64,000 nucleotides of DNA, from positions 1 to 64,000 of IMG/VR virus record IMGVR_UViG_3300010158_000027. The stretch is one strand, 5' to 3'. Of this stretch, positions 142-58,939 are shown one piece after another. The number at the start of each line of letters is the position of its first letter. Within the stretch, counting starts at the first letter, position 1. The notes under the pieces are model-generated. The model searched no databases and was not told the origin of the DNA. It saw nothing but the letters and a program-made list of their open reading frames with translations. Position numbers and translations under genes: made by a program.

Positions 142-552
142 ATGAAAAGAGTAATAAGATTAACTGAATCTGATTTAACAAGAATTGTTAAACGAGTAAT
201 AAAAGAACAATCTTCAGGGGTAGTTAAAGTTAGGGGTTGGGACACGTTAGATGGAATGACTAAAGAAACACATGGTGGGTGGATGCTTGACATCACTAAC
301 ATTCATTTAGAGAATATGGTACTTAAATTTAATTATGCGATTCCTGGAACAACCTCAAAAGGTACTGGACTTACTATGTGTCGTAAGAGTTCAACTCCCG
401 AATACGATTCGATAGCTCTCACAATTAATAATCAAACTCATCAATTATTTTTAACACCAGTAGGCTATAAAAACTTAACTCAGCTGTGTCGCACATATGC
501 AGGTAGAACTCCATCACCTACCGAGACACCAACGAATGGTGACTACGCATAA
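142..552 (+). CDS. Hypothetical protein with conserved N-terminal leader (MKRVIRLTESDLTRIVKRVIKEQ)
   Basis: ORF; TATTTAT at 104-110; leader nearly identical to that of 58376..58939. Confidence 0.85.
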   Translation: MKRVIRLTESDLTRIVKRVIKEQSSGVVKVRGWDTLDGMTKETHGGWMLDITNIHLENMVLKFNYAIPGTTSKGTGLTMCRKSSTPEYDSIALTINNQTHQLFLTPVGYKNLTQLCRTYAGRTPSPTETPTNGDYA

Positions 553-573
553 CTAATATAACATTATACTATT

Positions 574-600
574 GTCCCCATCTCTAATACAGGTGGGGAC
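574..600. terminator. Hairpin terminator downstream of 142..552
   Basis: Inverted repeat GTCCCCA...TGGGGAC followed by TTTC. Confidence 0.7.
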
Positions 601-613
601 TTTCTATGCCATA

Positions 614-722
614 AAGTTATTAACATGACAACTTGTCAATGGGGAATCATATATAAGTTATTAACATGACAACTTATTAAGGTAGGGGATAGATAAAGTT
701 ATTAACCTGACAACTTGTCAAT
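614..722. repeat. Three direct repeats AAGTTATTAAC(A/C)TGACAACTT at a 41-bp period
   Basis: Copies start at 614, 655 and 696. Confidence 0.9.
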
Positions 723-953
723 AGGGGGGTGCCTATCATATAAACCCCCTCCCTACGTATTTGGCATACCCCCCTCCCCCTTTATGTGTCCCGTATCCCC
801 CCTCCCCTCCTGACATTATGACAGGGTCAAAAGGGGGGACGATACCCAAAACGATGTGTATATATTAAAACCCCCTTTTAGGGTCATATCCTTAAAATAA
901 ATTTCCAGAAAAATTTTAAGAAAATCGGAGTATTTATTAATAAACAATATACT

Positions 954-1463
954 ATGGGAAAATTTATAATAACTGAATCAGAGAAAAATAACATTCGTTT
1001 ACAATATGGGATAATTAAAGAATCGGATGAGATTGATTTAATTAAAACGGAATTATCTGATAGTGGGGTTTCTATACCTGTTGAAAAAATGATTGATTCA
1101 ACTGAACCATTATGTACATCACCTGAAACGGGTGACCCTATGGAAGATTCTATTTTATCTAAAGTGTGGGAATGGGCTCAGACACAAAGTGTGGAAACAT
1201 TAAAGGATATGAAATCAAAAATTAGAGAGTCTATTAATGTGGCAAAAACTTTAATCAAAAATAAAAGGGTGGATGAACAATCGGCACCCATTCTTATTAT
1301 TGGGGGAATTGGTATTAGTGCTAGTTTATTAATATCCATTGGGGTATTATTGATATTTATAGTAGTTATTGCCATTGTATCAAGATCTTCAAAACGAAAA
1401 AGTCCTTGTCAACGTAGACGTAAGTTAACCAAACGTTACGGTATAGATGGGAACTTTATGTAA
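954..1463 (+). CDS. Leader-bearing protein with a C-terminal transmembrane helix
   Basis: MGKFIITESE...IIKES leader; long hydrophobic stretch followed by a basic tail. Confidence 0.8.
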   Translation: MGKFIITESEKNNIRLQYGIIKESDEIDLIKTELSDSGVSIPVEKMIDSTEPLCTSPETGDPMEDSILSKVWEWAQTQSVETLKDMKSKIRESINVAKTLIKNKRVDEQSAPILIIGGIGISASLLISIGVLLIFIVVIAIVSRSSKRKSPCQRRRKLTKRYGIDGNFM

Positions 1464-1522: not shown

Positions 1523-2068
1523 ATGAAAATCATTATTACAGAGGACCAATACGGACAATTAACTGAAATGATTAAACTTGACATCAAGGTTGGTGATACC
1601 ATAATGGGTGGCAAGTTTAAAAATAAGAAGGTTGTTGTAAAAACAATTGGAAAAAATGATAAGGGAGATATTACAATTAACGGTAAACCTTTATTAAGAT
1701 TCAGAATTATAAAAGAATCCACATCAATTGATAAAAACAAAAATAAGGACTTTTTGACTAATCTCATGGGAATTGACTTTACTGATAAGATTCAGATGAT
1801 AACCTCATCATCTGATGTTCCAAATAGTTTTGATGATGGTATTGCTCCATCAACTATCAAAACATATTTGAATCATTGGGGTCCGATGTATCTTTTTGAA
1901 CTTGATGGTGTAAAATATCTTTATCAAAATAGAGGTGATTTTGAAATGTTTATTGATGAGGACGGATATTGGCATAAAGATGAAATACCTGAAAAACTTG
2001 GTATTGGTATATTGGGGTTAAAGTTCTCAGATATTATTGATATGTATTTTGATGAGGAAAACATGTGA
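1523..2068 (+). CDS. Hypothetical protein with MKIIITE leader
   Basis: ORF; TATTTAT at 1511-1517. Confidence 0.8.
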   Translation: MKIIITEDQYGQLTEMIKLDIKVGDTIMGGKFKNKKVVVKTIGKNDKGDITINGKPLLRFRIIKESTSIDKNKNKDFLTNLMGIDFTDKIQMITSSSDVPNSFDDGIAPSTIKTYLNHWGPMYLFELDGVKYLYQNRGDFEMFIDEDGYWHKDEIPEKLGIGILGLKFSDIIDMYFDEENM

Positions 2069-2164: not shown

Positions 2165-2749
2165 ATGGGACTTATTATAACGGAAGAAGAAAAAAAATCT
2201 ATTAGGGGAATGTATCTTTTAAATGAAAACCGTACCATACCTCATCTTACAGAGTTATTAAAGAGTTTAGTTTTCAAGGATTTTGATTTGGACTTTAAAC
2301 TCACCCATAAAGGGTTGTTTGGTTATAATAGTTATTTCTTAAAAATTTATCTTGATCCAGAAGTTATGTGTATGTCGGGGGATATGTATGATTCTGATGC
2401 AATCGATTTTTTAGATAACGTGGAGGAAAATATTCATGGGGTATTACCTTATGTTGGTTTGTCCGATTCGGAACTTATGTTGGAGTTTGAGTTTTTAAAC
2501 GATAAAGAATTTTCAAATAAACTTGTTGGTATGGTTAATGGGATTTTTCCCACGTTATATGATAGGATTGAAGATTTGCCCAAGTTGGTTAATATGAAAT
2601 CAAATCAAAATGGTGGTAAACCTGAGTTTAAGATTTCGTTTCGATTTGATAATCGTCCAAAGATGGGTCAAATACAAAGGATGTATGAATATATCCACGA
2701 ATTACTTCCAACCTTTGAGGATGTGTATTTGGATTTTGGGGTGATATAG
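2165..2749 (+). CDS. Hypothetical protein with leader
   Basis: MGLIITEEE...LLNEN; TATTTAT at 2141-2147. Confidence 0.8.
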   Translation: MGLIITEEEKKSIRGMYLLNENRTIPHLTELLKSLVFKDFDLDFKLTHKGLFGYNSYFLKIYLDPEVMCMSGDMYDSDAIDFLDNVEENIHGVLPYVGLSDSELMLEFEFLNDKEFSNKLVGMVNGIFPTLYDRIEDLPKLVNMKSNQNGGKPEFKISFRFDNRPKMGQIQRMYEYIHELLPTFEDVYLDFGVI

Positions 2750-2972: not shown

Positions 2973-3647
2973 ATGAAAAGAATTATAAGACTTACTGAAT
3001 CACAATTGATTAGTATGGTTAACAATGTTATAAAGGAAATAAATACCGAAAACTCATATATCAATAATCAAGATACCGAACAATATCAAACAAAAAATAC
3101 AAATGTATTTGGTAATTCACCACATTCTAATTTTATTGATTATGGTATTCAATTTATGGGTTCACGTACTAAGGGAATGTATCAGGCTGTTTTTATGAAA
3201 ACCATGCCAGACGAATTCTATTCTTTTGTTAATCAATTTGATGATGAAATCAAAAGTGAAATTTTTGATTCTTTATCTAAAATTTATATTGAATCGAGTG
3301 GCGAATATAATCGCATACATTTTAGAGAAGGGATTCACCCATATTTAAAAGGTATCGGATTGGGGTATATAATATATGAAGCCTTTATCAAATACTTGGG
3401 GTTCGCATCTTCATCTGAAAGCGCAACATCTGATGCTAGAAAAATTTGGGAAAAACTTTTAAATGATCCTGACTTTCATGGTATTGTTTGTGGGGATGAA
3501 AAACAAGGTGGGGTTTTAATATTTGATAAGTCTTATAATGAAAATGTTGAGGGCATTGCAAAAAAATTCTTATCTGAAAGATGTAAACAAAACGCAAAAA
3601 TTGACGATTCATTAATTAAGATGTATCCTAATTTAAATAATATATGA
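2973..3647 (+). CDS. Leader-bearing GNAT-like acetyltransferase (putative)
   Basis: IHPYLKGIGLGYIIY resembles the acetyl-CoA binding loop; followed by ATSDARKIWEKL. Confidence 0.5.
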   Translation: MKRIIRLTESQLISMVNNVIKEINTENSYINNQDTEQYQTKNTNVFGNSPHSNFIDYGIQFMGSRTKGMYQAVFMKTMPDEFYSFVNQFDDEIKSEIFDSLSKIYIESSGEYNRIHFREGIHPYLKGIGLGYIIYEAFIKYLGFASSSESATSDARKIWEKLLNDPDFHGIVCGDEKQGGVLIFDKSYNENVEGIAKKFLSERCKQNAKIDDSLIKMYPNLNNI

Positions 3648-3982: not shown

Positions 3983-3993
3983 CCCTTTGATAA

Positions 3994-4215: not shown

Positions 4216-4335
4216 AATACAAAGATAACGTTTAACTTTATATTGAACGCGGAATTTCTAAAAAAAATTTTAACACAAAATCACCCCCTACCCCCTCTTT
4301 ATTGTTTTGTCTTGTATTTATTAATAAAAGAAACT

Positions 4336-4992
4336 ATGAAACATTTATTAAATGACTTAAGCGAAGAAGAAAAGAATAATATTCGTGAACAACATGCTGG
4401 TGGCATGAAAGTGAGTAACGCTAGATTTAACACATTATTGGAAACAAAATCGGGTGACGTTAAACCTTTTATTTCGGAACAATCTGGATCAATGAAACTC
4501 TCTTCATCTCCTGACTATATAAAGTTAAAACAATATTTTACTGTTGAATATGGTAAAGATAACGAATCACCTACATATGTCGGAAGTGATTACATTATTT
4601 GGAATGAGACACCTATTGGTAATTTTGATAATACAGTTAGATATAATTTGACAGTGGTTAAGTTAAAAACTGTAACAATGAAAGGTGGTCTGGCGGTTCT
4701 ACCCATAAGGGTTGGTACCGTCGACTTTGATTTTATGTCAAAGACTTTTATAAACGAGAAATATGACACTTTTAATGATTATAGCGGGATTAAATATTCA
4801 GTACAAGAAATTAACGATGCGTATTCATCATTCCCCAATGGACTTGACAAATTAGTTCCATCTTATAAGAAAACACAAGAAGGACAACTTATGGTTCAAA
4901 CCTTAAATAAAAATCCAGAATCTTTAAAGTTATTAAAATCGCAACTCACAGGTCAAGCTTTGGAAGTTTATAATGCCTTAACATCATCATAA
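4336..4992 (+). CDS. Hypothetical protein with leader (ATG at 4336 preferred over the track start)
   Basis: MKHLLNDLSEEEKNNIREQH; TATTTAT at 4315-4321. Confidence 0.8.
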   Translation: MKHLLNDLSEEEKNNIREQHAGGMKVSNARFNTLLETKSGDVKPFISEQSGSMKLSSSPDYIKLKQYFTVEYGKDNESPTYVGSDYIIWNETPIGNFDNTVRYNLTVVKLKTVTMKGGLAVLPIRVGTVDFDFMSKTFINEKYDTFNDYSGIKYSVQEINDAYSSFPNGLDKLVPSYKKTQEGQLMVQTLNKNPESLKLLKSQLTGQALEVYNALTSS

Positions 4993-5681: not shown

Positions 5682-6083
5682 ATGAAAATCATTATTACAA
5701 AAAAACAATATAGATCTTTGGTATTTACCCTTTTGGAAACATTGGTGGGTGATATCACCATCGGTGAGTCGACAGGAGATTACTACACTATTTTAGATCA
5801 AGATGGTGAGGATATAATTACCATATGGACTAACATGGATAATGGATGTAAAAATGATTTAACTTTGGGTTTTAGTTTTAGTGAAAGTCTGGAGGTATAC
5901 GTTCCCTACTTTAGAAAAAAGATATTTTCTGAAGTTTTAATTGAATATGTCTATGATCATACCAATATTAAATGTGACTGTATAGATTATCACTATGGAT
6001 TTACTGAGGATGATGGTGGTACAATGGCGAAGGGTCAGTTTTTGTATAACCTTAAAAAGAAAAAAAAGCTTAAATCACCTTAA
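5682..6083 (+). CDS. Hypothetical protein (MKIIIT leader)
   Basis: ORF; TATTTAT at 5670-5676. Confidence 0.75.
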   Translation: MKIIITKKQYRSLVFTLLETLVGDITIGESTGDYYTILDQDGEDIITIWTNMDNGCKNDLTLGFSFSESLEVYVPYFRKKIFSEVLIEYVYDHTNIKCDCIDYHYGFTEDDGGTMAKGQFLYNLKKKKKLKSP

Positions 6084-6159: not shown

Positions 6160-6399
6160 ATGAAAAAAGTAATAAGATTAACTGAAAGTGAATTATCTCG
6201 TATAATTAAACGAGTAATAAATGAAGCGGAAGAACCTGCAAACGATAATAGTAAAAACGGAACTATAAGTTGCGCAGAAAGACTGAAATCAGAATTTCAG
6301 CCTTTTCGTGCAAATAATGTTGCTTATGGAAATATTAAAGCGGAAAACGGTGGTTTTTCTTTATATAGAGGTTCTGAATTTTTTTGTAAAATTAAGTAA
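6160..6399 (+). CDS. Small leader-bearing protein
   Basis: MKKVIRLTESELSRIIKRVINE. Confidence 0.8.
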   Translation: MKKVIRLTESELSRIIKRVINEAEEPANDNSKNGTISCAERLKSEFQPFRANNVAYGNIKAENGGFSLYRGSEFFCKIK

Positions 6400-6460: not shown

Positions 6461-6958
6461 ATGGATCAAAATATACTAAATGAGATTAACCAAATGAAAT
6501 TTATGTTTGGTTATAAACCAGGGCTCGTGATATCCGAACAAGTTGAATTACCAAAATCAGATACTAACCCGGTGAATGTGATTCCGGACGCTCGTAAGAT
6601 ATCGGAACTTGAGGCAACTATATCTGTAGCTACCAGATCATTGGATGCTATTAAGACCCAAAAAGATGAGCAGTCTAAGAAGGAACAAATATCTGATCTC
6701 CAAACCCGACTGGACGACACTGTAAATAAGATTATAACCCCCGAGTTTAATAAAATGTCAAAGGAACAACAAAAAGTTTTAATGGGGGTGAAAACTCAGA
6801 TAGATACAGAATTAAATAAACTTAAAGGTATTGAGGTATCGGCACCAACCCAAACTAGAACTCCAGATGCTAAGGTGTCCGCGTGGGTTTCGGTGGCTGC
6901 AAGTCTTTTAGCGTTATGCACCAACGTGATAGACAAAATTAAAAAACCATTACAATAA
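6461..6958 (+). CDS. Leader-bearing coiled-coil protein with hydrophobic C-terminus
   Basis: MKFMFGYKPGLVISEQ leader, paralogous to the leader of 11458..11937. Confidence 0.8.
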   Translation: MDQNILNEINQMKFMFGYKPGLVISEQVELPKSDTNPVNVIPDARKISELEATISVATRSLDAIKTQKDEQSKKEQISDLQTRLDDTVNKIITPEFNKMSKEQQKVLMGVKTQIDTELNKLKGIEVSAPTQTRTPDAKVSAWVSVAASLLALCTNVIDKIKKPLQ

Positions 6959-7280: not shown

Positions 7281-7574
7281 ATGAACTTAAACAACAAATT
7301 AGTTTCAAGAATTGTAAAATCAATTCTTAAAGAACAGGAAGAAGATAAATCAGTTGAGACTTTATTTAACGATAACTCTGTTGAGGTACCTGCGGCTTGC
7401 AAGGCGGACACAAGTAAAGTCCCTTCAGTAGATATAAAGGCATGTGTAAAAGAAACGTTTACAAAGGCTCAAGGTTATTTAAAGGTGTTGGAATTGTTAT
7501 CAGACATGGAACCAGGTTTGAAGACACAAACTTTTGACTTACCAATAGGTGAATCAAAAAAAAGACGATATTAA
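7281..7574 (+). CDS. Leader-bearing hypothetical protein
   Basis: SRIVKSILKEQ; TATTTAT at 7259-7265. Confidence 0.75.
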   Translation: MNLNNKLVSRIVKSILKEQEEDKSVETLFNDNSVEVPAACKADTSKVPSVDIKACVKETFTKAQGYLKVLELLSDMEPGLKTQTFDLPIGESKKRRY

Positions 7575-9671: not shown

Positions 9672-10148
9672 ATGAGAGATTTATCAAAACAATTTAGTGA
9701 TAGAATATTAAGGTCAATATTGAAGCAACTTGGAGATGCATTCCATGATGAACATAACGGATATAGTGCTCGTGAAAGATACGAAAATGGATATTGTGAT
9801 ATAATCGATGATGTGGTTAAATATTTTGGGGTTAACGATTTAGACTGGGAGGAATATGGATTCTTTTTTAAATTAATAGAATTAAACCCTGACTATGAGA
9901 ATGACGATATCGTCATCAAATTACCAAAATTAGGTTTGTATGATGTTTTTTATGATGTGGAAGAAAGACAATGGATAACATCAACATATAGACACCGAAT
10001 CTACAGTTACGACCAGGGCATGATAAGTGACCAACTACATGGTGACGAAAATTTTGATGTCTTCGACGGCCGTGAGGTTAATACGGAGGTTAGAGATTCG
10101 CAACCGACGGATCAAACCCTTGTTGAGATAATTAAAGTTGAAATGTAA
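9672..10148 (+). CDS. Hypothetical protein
   Basis: ORF; TATTTAT at 9659-9665. Confidence 0.75.
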   Translation: MRDLSKQFSDRILRSILKQLGDAFHDEHNGYSARERYENGYCDIIDDVVKYFGVNDLDWEEYGFFFKLIELNPDYENDDIVIKLPKLGLYDVFYDVEERQWITSTYRHRIYSYDQGMISDQLHGDENFDVFDGREVNTEVRDSQPTDQTLVEIIKVEM

Positions 10149-11431
10149 TGATAAAAAAAATTAATATATCGGAGAATGATAGACAAACCATTTTGTCTAT
10201 GCATAAACTCATTGTTGAACAGTCGGGCGGGATAACTATACAAGGAACGGTTAAAGAAGATACAGAATCTCATGACCCATACCTTAACCTTAATGTAACA
10301 CTATACGATTCAAAGGGGGTTATAGTTGATAAGGGTCGGGCACGAACAGACGAAAATGGGGAATATAAAATGACTATACCTAATTTAGTTCCAGGTAACT
10401 ATACTCTTAAGTTTGGTGGTGGTGACAAGACGAATAATAGACCCATTAAAATCACCTCAGAGACCACTTCCCCCGTTGTTGTTAACATAGACTACAAATT
10501 CACAAGTCAGGAATTAGAACCGGTAACGGTAGAGGCGAAGTCTTACCGTGTCCCAATTTTTAACATTAAAGTTGTGACACCAAGTGGTGAAAATATAGTG
10601 GGTGCGGAAATAGAAATTTACCATAAGAATATCCTTATGAATTACTCAACATTTGTGGGTGGGGGTAATGAGGGCGTAACATTCGACGCAACTACCGATA
10701 CTGTTAATAAAAAAACGTCAGAGGATGGTTTAAAAAATATATGGATTGATTCGGATAAATACCCATACTTTAGTAGTGACAAAGACGACGAAGTGTGTGG
10801 TGAGGAAGAGCGGATTAAAATTGTTGTAAAATACCAAAATGTCCCTGTAGCGAAGGATGTTGAAACTTGTTTAAATAATGGTATGTATATTATTCCTACC
10901 GACGATTCTAAAACCATTAGAGTAAAAATTAAAAAACTACAAGATTTTGAAATCATAATACAACCATCATCACCAGAATCGTTAGATGACACACAAACAA
11001 CAAAGGTAGATTCTCCAAACATCATTTATTCAAAGATAGGGTTTAGAGAATTAATTAAAAAATCAACAGATGAGGGGAAACCCGCCTTTATTTTATTTTC
11101 TAGCAAGGGAGATAGGTTAAGTGATGATTTAATAACCAGACTTAACACAAATGAAGAAACCATTAGTAAACTTAACAATTACTATATACCCGTTAATTAC
11201 GTTGGTAGTGGGTCGGACCCTGAAGGATTTACTTTGGCTGCCGATTCACTAGGGATTTCACAAATACCAGCAATAGTGATAATAGAAGGAAACCCTGATA
11301 ATCGACCAAACAACACTACCCCTCGACCAATTAAAGGTAGTTATACGGAAATAAAAAAAGTCATCGATTTAACAAGTTTTTTTACGAGTCCCAAAAATTA
11401 CTTAACTATAATAAATGATTTATTGAAGTAA
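10148..11431 (+). CDS. Leader-bearing protein with carboxypeptidase-regulatory-like (prealbumin-fold) domain(s) and a C-terminal thioredoxin-like domain lacking CxxC
   Basis: ITIQGTVKE...RTDENGEYKM...PGNYTLKF; KKSTDEGKPAFILF...GISQIPAIVII. Confidence 0.55.
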   Translation: MIKKINISENDRQTILSMHKLIVEQSGGITIQGTVKEDTESHDPYLNLNVTLYDSKGVIVDKGRARTDENGEYKMTIPNLVPGNYTLKFGGGDKTNNRPIKITSETTSPVVVNIDYKFTSQELEPVTVEAKSYRVPIFNIKVVTPSGENIVGAEIEIYHKNILMNYSTFVGGGNEGVTFDATTDTVNKKTSEDGLKNIWIDSDKYPYFSSDKDDEVCGEEERIKIVVKYQNVPVAKDVETCLNNGMYIIPTDDSKTIRVKIKKLQDFEIIIQPSSPESLDDTQTTKVDSPNIIYSKIGFRELIKKSTDEGKPAFILFSSKGDRLSDDLITRLNTNEETISKLNNYYIPVNYVGSGSDPEGFTLAADSLGISQIPAIVIIEGNPDNRPNNTTPRPIKGSYTEIKKVIDLTSFFTSPKNYLTIINDLLK

Positions 11432-11457: not shown

Positions 11458-11937
11458 ATGAAAAAAGATTTAAAAAACGAATTACAAGAAATGAAATTTT
11501 TATTTGGGTATAAACCAGGTAGAGTAATTTCGGAACAAGATATGTCAAAAATGGATATCGATTTAGAAATGGACGATGAGTACGATGTTGATTTTGCTAA
11601 TCCAGATGTTGCTCCGGCTCCATCAAGAGAAAAGGAAAAAGAAAGAGAAAGAACTGCTCCCGATACTGACCCATTCCCTAACCCATTCGATCCTGAACGT
11701 TCTAAAGAATTTAACCCTCTTCCAGATTTACAACCACAAGGTAAAGATAGATTTAGTGATGATGACGATGACGATTATAAAGATCGAAGTATGTATAGTC
11801 CATACTATGGTGATGATGACAATGAGGATATAAATGAACCATTCACTGACGAAGTAGAAAGCGATGAAATCGATAGTGACGACACTAGTAAATCTTTAGA
11901 GGACTTAGTTAGCAAATATTTGAACAAATTAAAATAA
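11458..11937 (+). CDS. Acidic, Pro-rich leader-bearing protein
   Basis: MKFLFGYKPGRVISEQ; low-complexity D/E/P content. Confidence 0.8.
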   Translation: MKKDLKNELQEMKFLFGYKPGRVISEQDMSKMDIDLEMDDEYDVDFANPDVAPAPSREKEKERERTAPDTDPFPNPFDPERSKEFNPLPDLQPQGKDRFSDDDDDDYKDRSMYSPYYGDDDNEDINEPFTDEVESDEIDSDDTSKSLEDLVSKYLNKLK

Positions 11938-11938: not shown

Positions 11939-12934
11939 ATGAAAAAATGGCAACTATTATACGAATCCCCACCTGTGGGTGATTATTTACCTGATGAATT
12001 CAAGCAACAGGCAAAATTAGCGGGAACAACTCAAGACAGGGATGAAAAATCTCAAAGAAGAAATAAGTTAATGAGTGTTATGCAAAACTTACCTAACCTT
12101 GAGAGAGAAAATAAGGAGGAGCTTCAAGATTTAGCTGTTGAGGCTATTTTTAGAATCTACCCATCGTTAAAAAAGATGGTTGATTCGGGTAAAGTAATTA
12201 TCGACGCTAAATTAGTTTCAAATCCAGGTGGTAGACAAACCCCACAAAACTTTCCATCAAAGGAAATCGAAAAAGTTAAGGAAAAAACACCTAACTTCTC
12301 AGCATTGGAAAAGAAAAGACACTTTCAAAACGCACAAACACAAGCAAGAGCTTGGATTGATGGTTTTAATTACGTTTCAAACTTTATGGATGAGGAATTG
12401 GACGCTATTGACCCACAACTATATGATAAGTATAGAGATTTCACTAAAGGTATCTCCGATTTTTATTGGGACAATGCTGATATGTTAGAAAGGATGGCAT
12501 CAAACGGTGCTGGAAGAATTGCATATTGTGATGTCCTACCAATGGAAGATGGAAAAGTTAAAATTGAGGCTAGAGCCCCACATTTCCCATTACTTGTTCA
12601 CGAATTAGTTAAAGGTGCTGAATATTATAAGACAGCGGCTAGTTTACCAAAGGATCCTGAGGTAAGACAAGCAATAATTAAAAGTACAGACACACATAAG
12701 CACGAAATTCAAAATATGAACTACGGTCGAGAGATTGTTAATAGAATGAGAGGGATTTTAGCCAAAAGAGTGGAAGGATATTTACCAAATATGGAAATTC
12801 AAATCTCAACACAGATGGATATGTTACCTGAAGATAAATATAACGAATATATGGATGCGATTGTTAATAATGATAACGATGGTATACTTGGATTCATAAT
12901 TTTTGCAGAAAAAATAGTAAAACAATTACGATGA
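11939..12934 (+). CDS. Hypothetical protein (331 aa)
   Basis: ORF; starts MKKWQLLYES. Confidence 0.8.
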   Translation: MKKWQLLYESPPVGDYLPDEFKQQAKLAGTTQDRDEKSQRRNKLMSVMQNLPNLERENKEELQDLAVEAIFRIYPSLKKMVDSGKVIIDAKLVSNPGGRQTPQNFPSKEIEKVKEKTPNFSALEKKRHFQNAQTQARAWIDGFNYVSNFMDEELDAIDPQLYDKYRDFTKGISDFYWDNADMLERMASNGAGRIAYCDVLPMEDGKVKIEARAPHFPLLVHELVKGAEYYKTAASLPKDPEVRQAIIKSTDTHKHEIQNMNYGREIVNRMRGILAKRVEGYLPNMEIQISTQMDMLPEDKYNEYMDAIVNNDNDGILGFIIFAEKIVKQLR

Positions 12935-13209
12935 GAATAACAGAATCAGATATTAGAAGAATTATTAAAAATGTAGTCAACGAAAACAGTGGATACGTTA
13001 CTGGATTAGCACCATCAGAAAGAACTGAACTTGTTGATGACGTAATTAATAGAATTAATGAGCACGGTACGAAATATATCGTTGAACTTAACAAACTTAA
13101 CTCGGAATTTCCTGTTGAAAAATACAAAAGACAAGACAGAATCAAAAGAAAAGATTTTGAGCTACCTAAAGGGGTTAGAGTTCAGAGTTCTTACTTCAGT
13201 GAAGACTAA
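12931..13209 (+). CDS. Leader-bearing small protein
   Basis: MRITESDIRRIIKNVVNEN. Confidence 0.8.
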   Translation: MRITESDIRRIIKNVVNENSGYVTGLAPSERTELVDDVINRINEHGTKYIVELNKLNSEFPVEKYKRQDRIKRKDFELPKGVRVQSSYFSED

Positions 13210-14149: not shown

Positions 14150-14722
14150 ATGAAAATCATTATAACAGAGTCACAATACCGTTTTTTAATGGAAAATACC
14201 GCTGAAATCGACCATATTTTAGATAAAGTAAGCGAAATAGGGTACGAAAACCTTGAAAATGACGAAAAAAGTACCCTAAATAGGTACTCAGAGTGGTTAA
14301 ATTCGGGTAAAAAGGGAGACTTTATACCCCAAAATACGTCTAAAAGTAACAATTTAGGGGGTGCAGATGACGATTCTGACGACAAATCAGGTAACGAATA
14401 CACCACATATTTACCCGATGGTAGTGGGTTTTCATTCAGATATGACTATTCTGACGTATTAACGGAAGAAATACTTCATTACGGGGTAGTAAAATACCAT
14501 GGAGAGGACTGGTCGGGGTTAATTGCCACCAATAACAATGGTAAAATCACTGAAATTGACTTTGTTTTGGAGTCAAATGGGTTCCAATCTTATGATTCTA
14601 ACGATGAATTGGGTAGATATGACGAAGAAAAAGAAGTTAGACTACAAGATGTGTTAGGTAATGATTTACATCAAGTTAAATACTTCCTACAAGAAGAGGT
14701 AATTTCCGATTTAATGGATTAA
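14150..14722 (+). CDS. Leader-bearing hypothetical protein
   Basis: MKIIITESQYRFLMEN; TATTTAT at 14139-14145. Confidence 0.8.
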   Translation: MKIIITESQYRFLMENTAEIDHILDKVSEIGYENLENDEKSTLNRYSEWLNSGKKGDFIPQNTSKSNNLGGADDDSDDKSGNEYTTYLPDGSGFSFRYDYSDVLTEEILHYGVVKYHGEDWSGLIATNNNGKITEIDFVLESNGFQSYDSNDELGRYDEEKEVRLQDVLGNDLHQVKYFLQEEVISDLMD

Positions 14723-15337
14723 ATCATTGTCTTTTAAGTAATCAAACATTGTTTTAGCCAACTTTTTACCTGCCTTTATATCTGAAGGGTAGTGTGCTTT
14801 AGCCATTTGTCTGGATTGTGTGATATCCTTCACTATCTTTTTAAAGTCTTTCTCGTATTTAGGGTAAAACTTAGTTAGAATTAACCCTAAAAGGTTAGAT
14901 TGGGTTGAATGTCCTGACGGATATGCGTAACCACTCATCGATTTCATCGACATATCATCTAATTTATCATCTAATTTAAATGGTCTGGGTCTTTTAAAGT
15001 GCTTTTTTAGTATACGTATTACTTTAGTCGCGTCCTGTTTAATCTTTTTTAATAATTCCTTATCGTACTTTATACTTTTACTATCTAAAAAATCAAAAAA
15101 GTTACCCACCACGTCATCCTTCTCTTGAACGAACTTTTTATCTAAATCCAAAGTGCTTAAATGTTCTATTTCTTTTTTAGTTTCTTCACTATCGTCTTCA
15201 GGTGGTGTTTGATTTTTAAATGAATCCACATCAAAATCTTTAAATATGTTATCTTCGGGTACGTCATTATTTATTGATTTACCTTCATTTAACAACATTA
15301 ATAATTTAATTCTATTTATTTCTTGGAGTATGTACAT
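14711..15337 (-). CDS. PAP2-family (acid phosphatase/haloperoxidase) protein with leader
   Basis: KKHFKRPRP, AYPSGHS and SRQMAKAHYPSD are the three PAP2 motifs. Confidence 0.85.
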   Translation of the reverse strand: MYILQEINRIKLLMLLNEGKSINNDVPEDNIFKDFDVDSFKNQTPPEDDSEETKKEIEHLSTLDLDKKFVQEKDDVVGNFFDFLDSKSIKYDKELLKKIKQDATKVIRILKKHFKRPRPFKLDDKLDDMSMKSMSGYAYPSGHSTQSNLLGLILTKFYPKYEKDFKKIVKDITQSRQMAKAHYPSDIKAGKKLAKTMFDYLKDNDLIH

Positions 15338-15363: not shown

Positions 15364-15954
15364 ATGATAACAAAAAAAGATTTACTAAATAAGAAGTTCT
15401 ATAATTCTCCAATTTTAGAACAAGAAGAGTCTGAGGAAAACGACGAAAAAAATGAAGGAGGTAGAGTTAAACTTTATAAATTAAGTGAAAGTGTAATTAA
15501 CATTTTAACTGATAGAATTAAAGACGAATACACTGCACATTATTACTATAGAGCGGCAACTAATTGGTGTGAAGATATGAATTATAAAAAAGCTGCGGAA
15601 TTCTTTAAAAATGAGGCTAAAGACGAACTGAAACATTCACAGAAAATTCAAGAGTACATGGTTGGGTTTAATATTATTCCAGAAATCCCTCAAGCACCAA
15701 CAAAACATACGTTTAATAGTTTAATTGATATTATTAATGGAGCATATAAAATGGAGTTAGATTTAATGAATGAATATAATAAAAACTCACAAGACTTAAT
15801 ATCTGAAGACATTACAACATTTGATTTTTTAACTGAATTTAGAGAAATTCAAAAAGGTGCTGTTGTTGAATACAATGATTTAATTAATGCAAGTGAATTG
15901 GTTAATATGAAAGATAAATTCCAAGTACTTTATTTCGAGCAAACTTATTTTTAA
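15364..15954 (+). CDS. ftnA: Ferritin (FtnA-like) with N-terminal extension
   Basis: EYTAHYYY...EAKDELKHSQKI...AYKME...FREIQ ferroxidase-type pattern. Confidence 0.8.
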   Translation: MITKKDLLNKKFYNSPILEQEESEENDEKNEGGRVKLYKLSESVINILTDRIKDEYTAHYYYRAATNWCEDMNYKKAAEFFKNEAKDELKHSQKIQEYMVGFNIIPEIPQAPTKHTFNSLIDIINGAYKMELDLMNEYNKNSQDLISEDITTFDFLTEFREIQKGAVVEYNDLINASELVNMKDKFQVLYFEQTYF

Positions 15955-17530: not shown

Positions 17531-18256
17531 ATGGAAAAAAACCTTAATGAGATGAATCCGGAACTATCCCCTAATGATCGGATAGTTTTGATACATATGG
17601 ATGACTACCGTCCGGTACCGATTTTATCGAAAGGTGTCGTTGAAAGTGACCCTCTAAAATATAAACAACAACAACCTAAGTTTTCAAAAAATGATTGTGG
17701 GTATGCTTATAAAGTGGCATGGTATGATCAAGACACTGGGGAACCTATAAGTACTCTACCATTAATGCCAGATACAGACTCGTGGTTATATGATAAAGAA
17801 TATTATGAATCAAATGTGGATTCACTAAATGAGTCTATGTTTAATAATGTGGATGATATTATTAGATGGGGGGATTTTTTAAATGTGTTTAGTAAAAGTG
17901 AACTCGAGTATGTATGTGAATTTTTTGAACTTGAGAGAAGGACAGGATTTTTTAATATGGTATTAGATGGTGGTAAATTTTTATTAGTTGGTTCTGATTT
18001 TATAAAGGACTACATTAAGTTAAAATCTTATGAAACCGAATTTGATAGTGAAGATAAAGAAATTCATGATGCGATAATTTCGAGAGCAGAAAAAGTTAGG
18101 ATGATATTTATAAGTAATGCTATGGAGCTTTTAGAAAACAACGACATGGATACTGAAATAGATGATGTAAAACATGCGATGATAAAACTGGCAAAATTAG
18201 CAAAAGAATATTGGGTGGAGAACTCAAATAAATTTTTAGATAAAGAAATAGAATGA
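17531..18256 (+). CDS. Hypothetical protein
   Basis: ORF; TATTTAT at 17519-17525. Confidence 0.8.
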   Translation: MEKNLNEMNPELSPNDRIVLIHMDDYRPVPILSKGVVESDPLKYKQQQPKFSKNDCGYAYKVAWYDQDTGEPISTLPLMPDTDSWLYDKEYYESNVDSLNESMFNNVDDIIRWGDFLNVFSKSELEYVCEFFELERRTGFFNMVLDGGKFLLVGSDFIKDYIKLKSYETEFDSEDKEIHDAIISRAEKVRMIFISNAMELLENNDMDTEIDDVKHAMIKLAKLAKEYWVENSNKFLDKEIE

Positions 18257-18762
18257 GAGGATTTTCAAGTATGTCTGATGAAGAAAGACAACAAATCAAA
18301 CAACAACATAGTAAAGTATACGATGGGTATGCTACCAATAACGTAACTTCCAACATGACACCGTTAATGGTTTATGATGCTGCTCAAGACAAGGCGGGGA
18401 TTACAGTAAATGCTAAAGGTGAGGTAAAACCATACCATAACCATAACGTTAATGAGATTGCAGCTAAAAACTTACATTACGATGAGATAGATGCGGCATA
18501 CGACTTTGACTCTCCTGGACCTCAACAAAGTATGGTACAACCAAACCCAGGAACGAAGCCGTACGAGTTTGATACTCACGGACCAATAGATTCTTATGGT
18601 GGTGGACTGTATGATACTACGACGTCTAATTTTGAGGGTGAACCTGAATTTAACGTTGATAACGAAGAGGATGAAGAAGTCGAAGAGGAAAAAATTGAGG
18701 ACATTAAAGAAAGTGTATCTAAATCTTTAGATATGTTTAAAAGGTTTCAAAAATTTAACTAA
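18253..18762 (+). CDS. Acidic hypothetical protein with leader-like N-terminus
   Basis: MSDEERQQIKQQH resembles the start of the 4336 protein. Confidence 0.75.
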   Translation: MRGFSSMSDEERQQIKQQHSKVYDGYATNNVTSNMTPLMVYDAAQDKAGITVNAKGEVKPYHNHNVNEIAAKNLHYDEIDAAYDFDSPGPQQSMVQPNPGTKPYEFDTHGPIDSYGGGLYDTTTSNFEGEPEFNVDNEEDEEVEEEKIEDIKESVSKSLDMFKRFQKFN

Positions 18763-20658: not shown

Positions 20659-20685
20659 ATAAAAATAAGTTTAATACTTATTTTT

Positions 20686-20961
20686 ATGGTGAACAACATA
20701 ACATTTGATCATATCACAGCTAAGATAACTTTAAAAAAAGTTTATTTTTTTGGTATTTTTAAACGTTACGCCATTATCATTATTGTACCATCATTAAAAA
20801 TCGCAAAAATCAAAACAAATATTTCAAATTTTAATTTTAAAGAGTCGCACCCTTTAAATATTAATGAGTTATTGTTATACGTTAAAAAAGAAAAATATAA
20901 AATTTCTTACACAACTAAAAACTCAAAATTAAAAATAATTTTAGATTATTATATTAATTAA
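20686..20961 (+). CDS. Small basic hypothetical protein
   Basis: ORF only. Confidence 0.55.
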   Translation: MVNNITFDHITAKITLKKVYFFGIFKRYAIIIIVPSLKIAKIKTNISNFNFKESHPLNINELLLYVKKEKYKISYTTKNSKLKIILDYYIN

Positions 20962-20993
20962 CGTTTTATATTTTTTAAAGTATTTATATTATT

Positions 20994-21260
20994 ATGAATA
21001 AGCTCAGAAACGATATTAAAAAAATACTTAAACTAATGGAGGTTGAAAAAACCGATGAGGAATTGGATGAAGAATCTGAGGTTAATGAAGAGGGTGAAGA
21101 AACAAGTACCGAAACGGAAACAACTACTCCTGACTCTGGAGCTCCAGGTATTTGGACAGCGGGACTGACAAGGGGACCAGCTAACCAATTAGGAAATACT
21201 AAATGGGCGGACACTGTCGGGGCACAATTAAAAAGAGGAAAGGGTAACATGTTAAAATGA
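20994..21260 (+). CDS. Small leader-bearing protein
   Basis: TATTTAT at 20981-20987. Confidence 0.75.
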   Translation: MNKLRNDIKKILKLMEVEKTDEELDEESEVNEEGEETSTETETTTPDSGAPGIWTAGLTRGPANQLGNTKWADTVGAQLKRGKGNMLK

Positions 21261-54429: not shown

Positions 54430-54522
54430 AGTATACGTTTTTCAACAAAGATAATAAACTTTTTGGGTTATTGGTATATTTTTTATAAAATAAAAATCCC
54501 CACCTTTTGAGTGGGGATTGTA

Positions 54523-56745: not shown

Positions 56746-57914
56746 AATAACTTTTTATTTTTACAATTAGTTTATTTTCATTTAAATCATATATTAAATT
56801 AATATTATTATCTACACAAAATTTAATTTTATAATCCATTTTTTCTTTATATCCTCCCAAAACCCGATCCAATTTATCCATATTTTTACCATTTAATAAC
56901 CCAAAAAACTCAATGTAAATATCTTCTTTAGGTAAGTAAAAATCACATTTCATATTACTATTGGGGTAGTTAGTCTCATAAACAAAATTTAAGTTATTTT
57001 TTTCTAAAAATAAAGCCACCCGATACTCACCCACACTTTTATATCTTATACCGTTATGGTAAGTTGGTATTCCATAATATTGTCTATTTTGGTTTAAGTT
57101 AATTTTACTATAAATAGTATTTTTTAATTCTTTACTTGTTGATTGATAAAAATTCTGTATTATTTTACTACTAATATACGGGGATAAATCCGAATATCTT
57201 TTAATGTCATCTTTAGATAATACACAATCAATAAAATCATTAATATTTTTATTTGTGGTACAATGTGTAACAATATTATTAATTTTTTCTTTAAACCCAG
57301 AATGCTTTAAAATGTCTGATTGACTTTTTTCATTATATTTAAACCCACTTTTACTTCTTTGTATTTCGGAATAATTCGATTTGTTTTTTAAACTCTCAAT
57401 CCACTTATTTTGCCTTTCGTCAAACACTACCCTCCCTTTATCCTTACCGTACTTTTCTATACATTTTTCCAAACTAAATGTGCTCTGCCTTTGTTTAATT
57501 TGGTTTTTAGACTCCTCAATAGAATACCCCTTTTTAATCCAATACTCAACGTTGGTTGTTGTCTTATCTTTATAATGTTCTGGATTATCTTTTTTTAAAT
57601 CGGATAATTTTTTACTGTTTTGTTTTTGTTTTTTAACAATAAAATTTTTAATGTCTTCATCCCCCCCAACCCATACACTTTAAAAATTTTTTATCATATA
57701 TAGTATCGGGGTATTTTAAAATGGATTTAATTGTGGGTTTAACTTGTTTGTAATTTACAAAATCCGTTTTTTCGATAAAATCTTGAATTTCTTTTTTATG
57801 CGAAACATCAAACTTTATAAAGTACTTATAAAATCCACCATTAACTATAAAGTTTTCAAAATCTTCTATAGTTAAAACCTCAAATATCGGTTTACTTCTT
57901 TTTTTAATTAACAT
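56729..57914 (-). pseudogene. Homing-endonuclease-like gene (PD-(D/E)XK/Vsr-like), frameshifted at a G7 run (57661-57667)
   Basis: The 85-aa ORF joins a frame that stays open to 56729 if one G is removed (394 aa); KSVGEYRV...CDFYLPKEDIYIEFFG. Confidence 0.7.
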
Positions 57915-57959
57915 AACACTATACAGGATGTGGGAAATACCACACCCTGACTATAAATA

Positions 57960-58253
57960 TCACATAGTTTCAATATTGTGAGTATTCACATCTGAAATTT
58001 TTTCTACCTCAATCCAAGTATCCCCTAAAACACATCCAGGTTCCCCTAAGATGATTGGGTTATTTTTTTTTCTTCTCGAAAGTATTTGGGCGATTCTATT
58101 AATCTCATCTTCTCTACCGACAACTGGGTCTAATTTACCTTCTTCTGCTAATTTTATTAAATCTCTTGAAAAATTATCTAACACAGGTGTTTTCGTTGAT
58201 CCTTCTTGGTTTTTATTTTTTGATTTGTCACTTCCGTCTGCAGATTCGATCAT
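57960..58253 (-). CDS. clpC: N-terminal ClpC extein (73 aa) plus IntN (24 aa, 58034-57963)
   Basis: [10 protein letters not shown]...[11 protein letters not shown]...[14 protein letters not shown]|[10 protein letters not shown]...stop. Confidence 0.92.
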
Positions 58254-58375
58254 ACCGATATTGATTTTTTATTTTTTATTTTTTCAAAGTTTAATTATAA
58301 ATAGACAAAAAATCAATTATTTAGTAGATAATACGTCTTTTTTAATCTTTGTTGTATTTATATATAAAATTGTAT

Positions 58376-58939
58376 ATGACTAGAATAATAAGATTAACAG
58401 AATCCGATTTAACAAGAATTGTTAAACGAGTAATAAAAGAACAAACCACTATGCCCCCAGTAACGGTTACCGCTCAGAGAACACAAAAACTGGAAGACAC
58501 TAAATTCACACCAAAACTATTTAACAAAATAACCGCGGCGAAGGGATTGGAGGTTACGGCATCAATAAAAAGTACTGACCCTACTACACGTAAACTTGAT
58601 ATTAAGCCTATTATGTGGAAAATAACACCATCGATAGTTAAAATTAAAGACAATAACGCTAAAGTGGTTAGAGTTCCTGGTATGTTAAACTTAAATATCG
58701 AACTAGAGGGTATTAAAGATACTTTTGTTATAGTTAAACTTAATTGTAGAACTGGTCAGATTGATTATGTAAATAAATTAATCCAAAACACGTATGATAA
58801 ATCACTGTCATTAGTTGCTGCAAATATGCCACCTTTTACAACCACAGTTAACGGATTCGCACAAACATTTAATAACAGTGGTTGGAAATACGTTGGTGCG
58901 ATTAAAGAGGTTGGTGATATGTATTGTAAATCTGTTTAA
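58376..58939 (+). CDS. Leader-bearing hypothetical protein
   Basis: MTRIIRLTESDLTRIVKRVIKEQ; TATTTAT at 58355-58361. Confidence 0.85.
   Translation: MTRIIRLTESDLTRIVKRVIKEQTTMPPVTVTAQRTQKLEDTKFTPKLFNKITAAKGLEVTASIKSTDPTTRKLDIKPIMWKITPSIVKIKDNNAKVVRVPGMLNLNIELEGIKDTFVIVKLNCRTGQIDYVNKLIQNTYDKSLSLVAANMPPFTTTVNGFAQTFNNSGWKYVGAIKEVGDMYCKSV

What the first reader, a model, noticed from the sequence alone, without database searches (positions are those of the whole stretch)
142..58444. Portable N-terminal leader on more than 20 unrelated proteins: candidate capsid-targeting propeptide system
Seen: families such as MKRVIRLTESDLTRIVKRVIKEQ (142, 2973, 6160, 12931, 58376), MKIIITE (1523, 5682, 14150), MKF(M/L)FGYKPG.VISEQ (6461, 11458) and N..LLNEI.R (15337-, 19078, 23338). 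Most end in hydrophobic-x-E followed by Q/S/N, after which the sequences are unrelated. The leaders at 152-210 and 58386-58444 are identical at 57 of 59 nt despite being 58 kb apart. Known: T4 internal proteins use a short capsid-targeting sequence that gp21 removes at (I/L)-x-E. Inference: a mobile leader cassette recruits diverse cargo (ferritin, phosphatase, GNAT-like, muramidase-like) into the head for injection.
Basis: partly seen in the sequence, partly recalled or inferred. Interest (0 to 1): 0.78.

Follow-up and report, generated by a model that had tools for sequence, protein, structure and literature searches.

The report
Portable protein leaders in jumbo phage
A 281-kb freshwater jumbo phage puts a few highly conserved 10-25-residue N-terminal peptides on about 46 otherwise unrelated proteins, and each peptide ends in the cutting motif of the phage's T4-type head protease, so they are most likely tags that load a large, fast-changing set of proteins into the capsid; this is inferred from sequence, not shown.

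Summary
The window is bases 1-64000 of a 281,269-bp IMG/VR phage. I found five leader classes on 46 of about 326 genes:
- A: MKIIITExQYxxLxE
- B: MKRIIRLTESDLTRIVKRVIKE
- C: MKQLIKQILKE
- D: LxxEIxRIKxLM...LxE
- F: IITEsEKxxIxxxY/H...LxE

Twenty strong and three weak cases lie in the window. All sit at the first Met. The 46 cargo sequences fall into 43 unrelated BLAST clusters. Selection acts on the peptide (pN/pS 0.2-0.4). In 82 IMG/VR proteins carrying leader B, conservation ends at an invariant Glu in [VI]-[IL]-x-E.

The genome encodes a gp21-family (Peptidase_S77) prohead protease. Its gp23-like capsid protein aligns RB69's maturation site LTE|A with INE|A. Leader genes share a TATTTAT(A) promoter-like motif with structural genes. 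Their cargo turns over quickly between relatives.

The best reading is a T4-style capsid-targeting propeptide system, expanded about ten-fold and using new leader sequences. A cultured relative, Flavobacterium phage immuto, has analogous leaders and could be used for the test.

The parts
142..552 (+). Class B leader gene. Leader is 142-207 (MKRVIRLTESDLTRIVKRVIKE|Q). Cargo is a 114-aa beta-sandwich of unknown function.
   Evidence: HMM E 2e-15. Orthologues keep the leader almost invariant while cargo identity is 35-69%. In the AF2 model the leader has pLDDT 45-49 and the cargo 84-90.
954..1463 (+). Class F leader gene. Leader is 954-1022 (MGKFIITESEKNNIRLQYGIIKE|S).
   Evidence: TATTTAT motif 23 nt upstream of the ATG.
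1523..2068 (+). Class A leader gene. Leader is 1523-1567 (MKIIITEDQYGQLTE|M).
   Evidence: A terminator-like hairpin and a TATTTAT motif lie 12 nt upstream. In relative G001 the cargo domain occurs both with and without a leader.
2165..2749 (+). Class F leader gene. Leader is about 2165-2227 (MGLIITEEEKKSIRGMYLLNE|N).
2973..3647 (+). Class B leader gene. Leader is 2973-3038 (MKRIIRLTESQLISMVNNVIKE|I).
   Evidence: HMM E 3e-12.
4336..4992 (+). Class F leader gene (MKHLLNDLSEEEKNNIRE|Q...).
   Evidence: RNA-library contigs match only 4335-4412 and then diverge.
5682..6083 (+). Class A leader gene (MKIIITKKQYRSLVFTLLE|T).
6160..6399 (+). Class B leader gene. Leader is 6160-6225 (MKKVIRLTESELSRIIKRVINE|A), followed by an acidic linker.
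   Evidence: HMM E 5e-14.
6461..6958 (+). Class D/E leader gene. Leader is 6461-6538 (MDQNILNEINQMKFMFGYKPGLVISE|Q).
7281..7574 (+). Weak C-like leader (MNLNNKLVSRIVKSILKE|Q).
   Evidence: Sub-threshold HMM hit. TATTTAT motif 22 nt upstream.
9672..10148 (+). Weak C-like N-terminus (MRDLSKQFSDRILRSILKQL). It has no [LIV]xE site, so membership is doubtful.
10148..11431 (+). Class F leader gene. Leader is 10148-10219 (MIKKINISENDRQTILSMHKLIVE|Q). Cargo carries a CarboxypepD_reg / Ig-like domain.
11458..11937 (+). Class D/E leader gene. Leader is 11458-11535 (MKKDLKNELQEMKFLFGYKPGRVISE|Q).
12931..13209 (+). Class B leader gene with a shortened leader, 12931-12984 (MRITESDIRRIIKNVVNE|N).
   Evidence: HMM E 1e-9.
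14150..14722 (+). Class A leader gene (MKIIITESQYRFLME|N), followed by a DUF6576-like segment.
14711..15337 (-). Class D leader gene (MYILQEINRIKLLMLLNE|G). Cargo is a PAP2-superfamily phosphatase domain with no predicted TM segment.
15364..15954 (+). Ferritin-like protein with a weak leader-like N-terminus (…NSPILE|QEESEE) and an acidic linker before the ferritin domain, which starts at residue 46.
   Evidence: It does not match any leader HMM.
18253..18762 (+). Class F-like N-terminus (MRGFSSMSDEERQQIKQQH). It has no [LI]xE site.
19078..20658 (+). Class D leader gene (MKLINEIKEIRRLINLIE|N). The 526-aa cargo has a PG_binding_1 domain.
20994..21260 (+). Class D leader gene (MNKLRNDIKKILKLME|V) with a very acidic 88-aa product.
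21257..23299 (+). Class D leader gene (MKKLNEELIRQLLLMNFDSSKVLSE|Q). The 680-aa cargo has a PG_binding_1 domain.
23338..26052 (+). Class D leader gene (MEDKLLNEINRFREITKLPLLTE|Q). The 904-aa cargo lies just upstream of the tail/fibre genes.
58376..58939 (+). Class B leader gene. Leader is 58376-58441 (MTRIIRLTESDLTRIVKRVIKE|Q). 64 of its 69 nt are identical to the copy at 142, and the cargo is unrelated.

Best explanation
The leaders are most likely capsid-targeting propeptides of the T4 kind.

Proposed mechanism:
1. Each leader is a short N-terminal strand-plus-amphipathic-helix peptide that docks a newly made protein onto the scaffolding core of the assembling prohead.
2. Once the shell closes, the phage's gp21-family (Peptidase_S77) protease cuts after the Glu of the [LIV]-x-E site at the leader/cargo junction. 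It often also cuts at a second site inside the leader, such as I-T-E or L-T-E.
3. The mature cargo stays in the head and is delivered with the DNA.

At least five leader classes (A, B, C, D, F) serve about 46 mostly small, soluble proteins that turn over quickly.

What is shown by sequence:
- The leaders exist and sit at the N-terminus.
- They are portable between unrelated cargo.
- Selection acts on the peptide.
- The junction motif is conserved.
- The protease family is present, and the capsid protein has a conserved maturation site.

What is inferred:
- Binding to the prohead core.
- Cleavage of the leaders.
- Packaging and injection of the cargo.
For: 1. The genome encodes a Peptidase_S77 protease at 69583-70293 (81.6 bits, over the cut-off). 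It sits in a T4-like head module with terminase, portal, an acidic scaffold candidate and a gp23-like capsid protein.
2. In the alignment with RB69 gp23, the maturation site FLTE|AEIGG aligns with HLINE|ASS, and the Glu column is invariant. Five of the eight [LI]xE sites of the capsid protein lie in residues 1-60. This is the multiple cutting of propeptides described for T4 (PMC5694885).
3. In 82 unique IMG/VR proteins with leader B, the unconstrained columns read [VI](78/82)-[IL](77/82)-x(variable)-E(82/82). After that no column is conserved. That pattern is the gp21 motif, with a free P2 position.
4. 44 of 46 leader proteins carry [LI]xE in residues 6-30 against 36% of the others. Site density is 4-10 times background inside the leaders and falls to about or below background after them.
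5. Selection is on the peptide. pN/pS is 0.22-0.44 with pS 0.5-0.78, and the invariant Ser of leader B uses six codons from both codon families.
6. The leader is more conserved than its cargo among orthologues. In the AF2 model it is a low-confidence helix detached from a confident cargo fold.
7. 25 of 46 leader genes have TATTTAT 11-24 nt upstream of the ATG. The same motif precedes the protease, scaffold candidate, baseplate wedge and fibre-like genes.
8. Only 16% of leader cargo is conserved in a relative with 76% capsid-protein identity, against 52% of other genes (p=7e-6). T4 internal proteins vary in the same way (PMC3012670).
9. One orthologue pair keeps the junction while the leader length differs: MKIIITESQYKQLIKE|SGIR in this genome and MRKIISE|SGIR in G001.
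10. T4 IPII and IPIII share MKTYQEFIAE|A followed by unrelated sequence. That leader is sufficient for packaging (PMC9026906).
Against: - There is no proteomic, structural or genetic evidence for packaging or cleavage in this clade.
- The leaders have no detectable sequence homology to the T4 CTS.
- 46 different packaged proteins is about ten times the T4 number.
- Some cargo is not an obvious injected protein (ferritin-like, PAP2, FKBP-neighbourhood proteins).
- [LI]xE is common in this K/E/I-rich proteome (36% of N-termini). Because members of a class are related, the effective sample is about five classes, not 46.
- The TATTTAT motif also lies 35 nt upstream of two helicase genes, so late timing is not established.
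- Two F-class members lack the site.
- The protease-leader complex prediction gave no answer.
Confidence: 0.58

Rival explanations
1. The leaders are uncleaved docking or oligomerisation peptides. They would attach many proteins to some other common hub, such as a tail or baseplate part, a membrane complex or a replication compartment. The terminal Glu would then be structural, for example a helix cap or salt bridge.
For: The leaders are amphipathic, with a predicted helix at residues 9-20. Several large class D proteins lie next to the tail genes and carry PG-binding domains. Nothing here shows cleavage.
Against: This does not explain why five unrelated leader classes all end in [LIV]-x-E with a free P2 position, why conservation stops exactly at the Glu, or why the same motif marks the capsid propeptide.
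Confidence: 0.2
2. The leaders are recognition tags for a phage-encoded chaperone or unfoldase. Candidates are the ClpB/ClpC-like AAA+ protein at 54523-58253(-), the FKBP isomerase at 8107-8532(-) and the M42 peptidase. The tags would control folding or timed degradation of accessory proteins.
For: The window encodes a two-ring Clp-type AAA+ ATPase, an M42 peptidase and an FKBP. Clp systems are known to read terminal tags (general knowledge).
Against: I found no co-variation or known tag resemblance. It would be odd for 14% of the genes to carry a degradation tag. It also does not explain the match to the capsid maturation site.
Confidence: 0.07
3. The conserved 5' coding block works at the RNA or DNA level. 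It could be a translation-initiation enhancer for near-leaderless mRNAs in a Bacteroidota host, or a recombination site that shuffles gene cassettes, like the PeSL cassettes of T4-type phages (recalled from memory).
For: The promoter-like motif often lies only 11-13 nt before the ATG, so the 5' UTRs must be very short. Many leader genes sit in terminator-promoter cassettes. One pair shares 64 of 69 nt.
Against: Synonymous sites are close to saturated while the amino acids are kept (pN/pS 0.2-0.4). Ser and Arg switch between codon families. The leader has stayed nearly invariant as a peptide across hundreds of contigs.
Confidence: 0.06
4. The shared N-termini are leftovers of gene duplication and gene conversion in a hyperplastic region and have no common function.
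For: 41 of the 46 genes cluster at the two genome ends. Some C-class genes are true paralogues with identical upstream DNA.
Against: 43 of 46 cargo sequences are unrelated. The leaders are under stronger constraint than the cargo. They are kept across relatives that share few cargo genes.
Confidence: 0.04

Closest known systems
Bacteriophage T4 capsid-targeting sequence (CTS) of the internal proteins IPI/IPII/IPIII and Alt, removed by gp21
   Same: Both are short N-terminal peptides shared by otherwise unrelated proteins that vary quickly. Both end in hydrophobic-x-Glu. The protease family (Peptidase_S77) and the gp23-type capsid with a propeptide cut at the same aligned site are the same. T4 IPII and IPIII share MKTYQEFIAE|A (PMC3012670, PMC9026906).
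   Different: There is no sequence similarity to the T4 CTS. There are at least five leader classes rather than one. The leaders are 11-26 residues long and often have two candidate sites. About 46 carriers per genome compare with about 4-8 in T-even phages. The host is a freshwater Bacteroidota, and function is untested.
Propeptides of ejection / inner-body proteins in phiKZ-like giant phages (phiKZ, 201phi2-1, SPN3US)
   Same: These are jumbo phages with many head-internal proteins processed by a gp21-related protease after Glu. The paralogues gp53/gp54 of SPN3US keep identical N-termini, which the authors call 'reminiscent of T4 CTSs' (PMC5694885).
   Different: Those propeptides are mostly 80-130 residues long, the motif is A/S/G-x-E, and the cargo belongs to paralogous families. 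Here P3 is L/I/V, the leaders are short, and the cargo is unrelated.
Encapsulin cargo-loading peptides
   Same: A short portable peptide directs diverse cargo, including ferritin-like proteins, into an HK97-fold shell (general knowledge).
   Different: Encapsulin peptides are usually C-terminal, are not cleaved and bind the shell protein. No homology was found.
PeSL (promoter-early stem-loop) mobile cassettes of T4-type hyperplastic regions (recalled from memory, not checked in a paper here)
   Same: Many leader genes are single-gene units with a hairpin and T-run terminator followed by a promoter-like motif, and they lie in a highly variable genome arm.
   Different: The conserved element here is inside the coding region and is selected as a peptide. 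The promoter motif is shared with structural genes.

Membership tests
T4-type CTS / internal-protein system | The phage encodes a gp21-family (Peptidase_S77) prohead protease within a T4-like head module. | tested here: met
   PF03420 scores 81.6 bits at 69745-70164. PHROG calls for head maturation protease, portal, terminase and gp23-like capsid protein agree.
T4-type CTS / internal-protein system | A short (10-20 aa) N-terminal peptide is conserved among otherwise unrelated proteins. | tested here: met
   46 genes give 43 cargo clusters. 82 IMG/VR proteins give 58 cargo clusters.
T4-type CTS / internal-protein system | The peptide ends in the gp21 cleavage motif (L/I)-x-E. | tested here: met
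   44 of 46 carry it. The Glu is invariant in 82 of 82 proteins, with a free P2 and I/L at P3. The capsid maturation site INE|A aligns with RB69's LTE|A.
T4-type CTS / internal-protein system | The leader is sequence-homologous to the T4 CTS (MKTYQEFIAE). | tested here: not met
   The leader A and B profiles find nothing in the T4 genome. The resemblance is only in pattern.
T4-type CTS / internal-protein system | Carriers are incorporated into the prohead core and found in virions. | not testable with these tools
   No virion proteome exists for this clade. The complex prediction gave no answer.
T4-type CTS / internal-protein system | The protease removes the leader in vivo. | not testable with these tools
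   This needs N-terminomics or an in-vitro cleavage assay.
phiKZ-like giant-phage propeptide system | The cleavage motif is S/A/G-x-E and the propeptides are long (about 80-130 aa). | tested here: not met
   P3 is L/I/V and the leaders are 11-26 aa.
Encapsulin cargo-loading peptide | A C-terminal, uncleaved peptide binds an encapsulin shell. | tested here: not met
   The leaders are strictly N-terminal: 92 of 92 lie within 7 residues of a Met.

The most novel reading that the evidence does not exclude
A clade of abundant freshwater Bacteroidota jumbo phages (at least 599 IMG/VR contigs) uses a multi-class capsid-loading code. At least five interchangeable N-terminal address peptides, all read and removed by one T4-type protease, would load 40-50 different, rapidly exchanged proteins (about 14% of the genes) into the head for co-injection. 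That would be the largest predicted injected-protein arsenal of any phage. The different classes might set copy number or position in the head.
Probability: 0.45. Interest if true: 0.82.

Novelty: new variant of a known kind. Interest (0 to 1): 0.68.

Why it matters
If the leaders are capsid-targeting propeptides, several things follow.
- Anyone could read the packaged and injected proteome of an uncultured jumbo-phage clade straight from sequence.
- Dozens of unknown small proteins would become candidate first-minute effectors such as anti-defence, cell-wall or nucleotide-signal enzymes.
- T4's three or four internal proteins would turn out to be the small end of a much larger, modular strategy.
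- The leaders would be new portable packaging tags for phage engineering in Bacteroidota.
- The analysis gives a simple search rule for other genomes with an S77 protease: look for N-terminal families that end in [LI]-x-E.

Tried and rejected
- Pfam and PHROG scans of leader proteins found no family covering any leader.
- tblastn of leader B against 50,697 GenBank phages found nothing. A control with an immuto leader found only immuto at E 1e-9, so the negative result is meaningful.
- The leader A and B profiles find no significant match in Flavobacterium phage immuto, Microcystis phage Mel-JY01, huge phage LR756508 or T4; the only hit is an 8-residue partial A match in immuto at E 0.03.
- The full-text search for leader strings returned zero papers. 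I found no paper describing these leaders.
- The protease plus leader complex prediction returned 'no answer', which is not evidence either way.
- The fold search of the class B cargo at 142-552 gave no match above TM 0.5.
- I rejected a DNA-level mobile cassette or RNA element because synonymous sites are saturated.
- I rejected signal peptides and membrane anchors because the leaders are charged and most cargo has no TM segment.
- I tested whether this phage belongs to the published bS21 huge phages. It has no bS21 gene, although the head-module layout and habitat match.
- I tried to assign the TATTTAT motif strictly to late genes. This was only partly successful because two helicase genes have it at 35 nt.
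- No RNA run holds this exact phage. Only relatives' contigs could be laid on the window, so no transcription start sites were obtained.
Full report
**Context.** The window is bases 1-64000 of a single 281,269-bp contig with 33% G+C. IMG/VR holds it as a 96%-complete virus record. DNA runs that hold it are freshwater lake metagenomes.

It is a distant member of the T4 superfamily. Just beyond the window lie the following genes:
- a large terminase (63139-64917);
- a portal with an HNH insertion (64957-67734);
- a Peptidase_S77 / gp21-type prohead protease (69583-70293; PF03420, 81.6 bits);
- a very acidic 495-aa scaffold candidate (70666-72153);
- a gp23-like major capsid protein (72180-73982).

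The capsid protein is 42-43% identical to those of Flavobacterium phage vB_FspM_immuto, Microcystis phage Mel-JY01 and a 484-kb uncultured phage. At least 599 IMG/VR contigs encode relatives of the capsid protein; the 80 best are 74% or more identical, and several of those contigs are 230-320 kb long.

The head-module layout, the FKBP gene, the genome size and the habitat resemble the freshwater Bacteroidetes 'bS21 huge phages' (PMC9723584). This genome has no bS21 gene. Signal peptides ending in ...FSQ / ...SHSQ fit a Bacteroidota host; that is my inference.

**The observation.** Clustering the first 70 residues of about 326 crudely called genes, followed by seed HMMs scanned over all six frames, gives five classes.

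| Class | Consensus | Members |
|---|---|---|
| A | MKIIITExQYxxLxE | 13 |
| B | MKRIIRLTESDLTRIVKRVIKE | 9 |
| C | MKQLIKQILKE | 9 |
| D | LxxEIxRIKxLM...LxE | 8 (two carry FGYKPGxVISE) |
| F | (I)ITE(S/E)EKxxIxxx(Y/H)...LxE | 7 |

For classes A, B and C the score distributions are bimodal: members score E 1e-15 to 4e-4 and noise scores E>1. Classes D and F separate less cleanly, and their weakest counted members score E about 0.05. Every counted hit begins at the initiator Met.

Of the 46 genes, 19 lie at 0-24 kb and 24 at 219-280 kb. The other three lie at 58, 84 and 190 kb. If the genome is circularly permuted, as T4-type genomes are, the two ends form one accessory arm of about 85 kb; that is inference. 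The window holds 20 strong and 3 weak cases.

With the first 30 residues removed, the 46 proteins form 43 BLAST clusters. The cargo is therefore unrelated, apart from one four-member paralogue group in class C.

**The peptide is what selection keeps.** Within classes, pN/pS is 0.22-0.44 while pS is 0.50-0.78. The invariant Ser of class B is encoded by TCT, TCC, TCG, TCA, AGC and AGT, and the Arg codons switch between AGA and CGN.

The copies at 142 and 58376 are an exception. That points to a recent transfer of the leader alone.

Among 17 orthologues of the protein at 142-552, cargo identity is 35-69% while 13 leader positions are invariant. In the AlphaFold2 model built on that alignment, the leader is a low-confidence helix (pLDDT 45-49) and the cargo is a confident beta-sandwich (pLDDT 84-90). 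The leader is therefore not an integral part of the fold.

**Portability in independent data.**
- A database search with the 142-552 protein returned many metagenomic proteins that share only the first 22-23 residues.
- An exact scan of IMG/VR for the back-translated core LTESDLTRIV hit at least 118 stretches. All 92 occurrences I could read lie 5-7 residues after a Met. The 82 unique proteins (median 140 aa) fall into 58 cargo clusters.
- Five relatives carry up to seven B leaders each.
- A complete 293,850-bp relative (G001, capsid protein 76% identical) has the same classes in its own variants, such as MKYLITESQ..., MNLQExIRKVLKEE...EINRFREILGLSLLKE and MGKFIITEEE....
- Only 16% of this genome's leader cargo has a homologue in G001, against 52% of other genes (Fisher p=7e-6).
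- The same cargo domain occurs with different leader junctions, or without a leader.
- Contigs from four lake RNA libraries match the window only over about 142-210, and likewise 4335-4412. They then run on into many different sequences, with break points at 207-210, the Glu or Glu+1 codon. These libraries can contain DNA, so this shows portability but does not prove transcription.

**Why the capsid-targeting reading is the best one.**
- *Junction motif.* In the 82 IMG/VR proteins, the columns my search pattern did not fix read V/I (78/82), I/L (77/82), a variable residue (N, K, S, R, E, M...) and then Glu in 82 of 82. After that no column is conserved. This is the (L/I)-x-E motif of T4 gp21 with its free P2 position.
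- *All classes share it.* 44 of 46 proteins have [LI]xE with the Glu at residues 6-30, against 36% of other proteins. Most classes also have an earlier site, ITE or LTE. T4-type propeptides are known to be cut more than once (PMC5694885).
- *The protease probably keeps this specificity.* RB69 gp23's maturation site ...FLTE|AEIGG aligns with ...HLINE|ASS in this phage, and the Glu column is invariant. Five of the capsid protein's eight [LI]xE sites lie in the 60-residue predicted propeptide. Two small head-module proteins have three times the background site density.
- *Shared promoter-like motif.* TATTTAT(A) is ten-fold enriched upstream of genes and lies 11-13 or 19-24 nt before the ATG. It precedes 25 of 46 leader genes, and also the protease, the scaffold candidate, a baseplate wedge gene and fibre-like genes. 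The sheath gene has it at 40 nt.
- *The T4 precedent is exact in form.* IPII and IPIII both start MKTYQEFIAE|A and then diverge. Those ten residues suffice to package foreign proteins. [quoted passage not shown]
- *One orthologue pair keeps the junction.* MKIIITESQYKQLIKE|SGIR in this genome corresponds to MRKIISE|SGIR in G001.

**Cargo.** Most cargo has no recognisable family. The recognisable items are:
- a phage lysozyme (254488, class A);
- two large PG_binding_1 proteins and a 904-aa protein directly upstream of the tail genes (class D, 19078-26052);
- a PAP2-type phosphatase domain without TM segments (15337-);
- a CarboxypepD_reg / Ig-like protein (10148);
- a weak DHH phosphoesterase match (224433);
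- a ferritin-like protein whose N-terminus only loosely resembles a leader (15364).

Wall-binding or wall-cutting proteins and small soluble proteins are plausible ejected proteins. Ferritin is less obvious.

**Weaknesses.**
- Nothing here shows binding, cleavage or packaging.
- The complex prediction returned no answer.
- [LI]xE is frequent in this proteome, and the classes, not the genes, are the independent units (about five).
- Two class F members lack a site.
- The promoter-like motif also occurs 35 nt upstream of two helicase genes, so late timing is suggested but not established.
- The leaders are not homologous to the T4 CTS.

I therefore put 0.58 on the CTS-propeptide mechanism. The rivals are uncleaved docking peptides (0.20), tags for the phage's Clp-like AAA+ or chaperone proteins (0.07), an RNA/DNA-level element (0.06) and functionless duplication remnants (0.04).

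**Comparison and novelty.** It works like the T4 CTS / internal-protein system, and it meets the family's sequence-testable criteria: the protease family, a shared N-terminal peptide on unrelated proteins, the (L/I)-x-E end and the aligned capsid maturation site.

It differs in four ways. The leader sequences are different. There are at least five classes. The leaders are longer and have two candidate sites. The scale is about ten times larger (about 46 genes, 14% of the genome).

It does not fit the phiKZ / SPN3US pattern of long propeptides with A/S/G-x-E, or encapsulin loading peptides. I found no description of these leaders in Pfam, PHROGs, GenBank phages or the searchable literature. My verdict is a new variant of a known kind.

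**A route to a test.** The cultured Flavobacterium phage vB_FspM_immuto has a T4-like head and an annotated prohead protease. It has its own multi-cargo N-terminal families, each ending in [LI]-x-E, and two of them resemble classes C and D here. One carrier is annotated as a cob(I)alamin adenosyltransferase and lies beside the terminase gene. Virion N-terminomics on that phage would decide the question.

Noticed in passing
window 53377-58253 (- strand): A ClpB/ClpC-like two-ring AAA+ ATPase (AAA, AAA_lid_9, AAA_2, ClpB_D2-small) appears to be split. A 97-aa ORF at 57960-58253 has an N-terminal sequence that looks Clp-like by eye (no Pfam match). The main body is at 54523-56745, and its first 120 or so residues are not AAA. 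Two unannotated ORFs lie between them (56729-57914). This could be an intein or homing-endonuclease interruption. An M42 aminopeptidase-like gene follows at 53377-54429.
   Followed up: partly
whole genome; in the window e.g. 1511, 2949, 5670, 6439, 23318, 58355: TATTTAT(A) lies upstream of 92 of 326 genes (ten-fold enrichment). It has two preferred spacings to the ATG, 11-13 and 19-24 nt, which implies leaderless or very short 5' UTRs. In the accessory arm it is often preceded by a hairpin and T-run, giving single-gene terminator-promoter cassettes. TATTTATA is the reverse complement of the T4 late promoter TATAAATA.
   Followed up: partly
G000 64957-67734 (L002:4957-7734): The 925-aa portal protein carries an HNH-endonuclease-like insertion at about residues 110-280, ahead of the portal domain at 412-806. 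A separate 591-aa homing endonuclease gene follows the capsid gene (74070-75845).
   Followed up: no
G000 134041-134178 (L005:14041-14178): A 45-aa ORF ends in an A-like leader sequence (NIVITEAQLEKLLEKLKK) just before the next gene starts at 134175. This is the only significant leader match that is not N-terminal. It may be an orphan leader, a frameshift or a mis-called start.
   Followed up: no
window 30449-38692: A 2747-aa ORF in the tail-fibre region has clearly higher G+C than the rest of the window (0.38-0.42 against 0.31-0.33).
   Followed up: no
window 14150-14722 and G001 74717(-): Directly after the leader, two proteins carry a DUF6576-like segment (…ILDKVSEIGYENLENDEKSTL…). It scores Pfam PF20216 E 1e-7, just over the cut-off. 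Its meaning is unknown.
   Followed up: no
window 8107-8532 (-) and 15364-15954: The phage encodes an FKBP-type peptidyl-prolyl isomerase and a ferritin/rubrerythrin-like protein. An FKBP gene is among the most highly transcribed genes in the related bS21 huge phages (PMC9723584).
   Followed up: partly
L232-L239 (Flavobacterium phage vB_FspM_immuto_3-5A, MW353176.1): 1803, 103762, 117587, 118588; 102250, 102836, 113144; 25470, 111631: This cultured T4-like Flavobacterium phage has three N-terminal families of its own, shared by otherwise different proteins and each ending in [LI]-x-E. It could serve as an experimental system for the question.
   Followed up: partly
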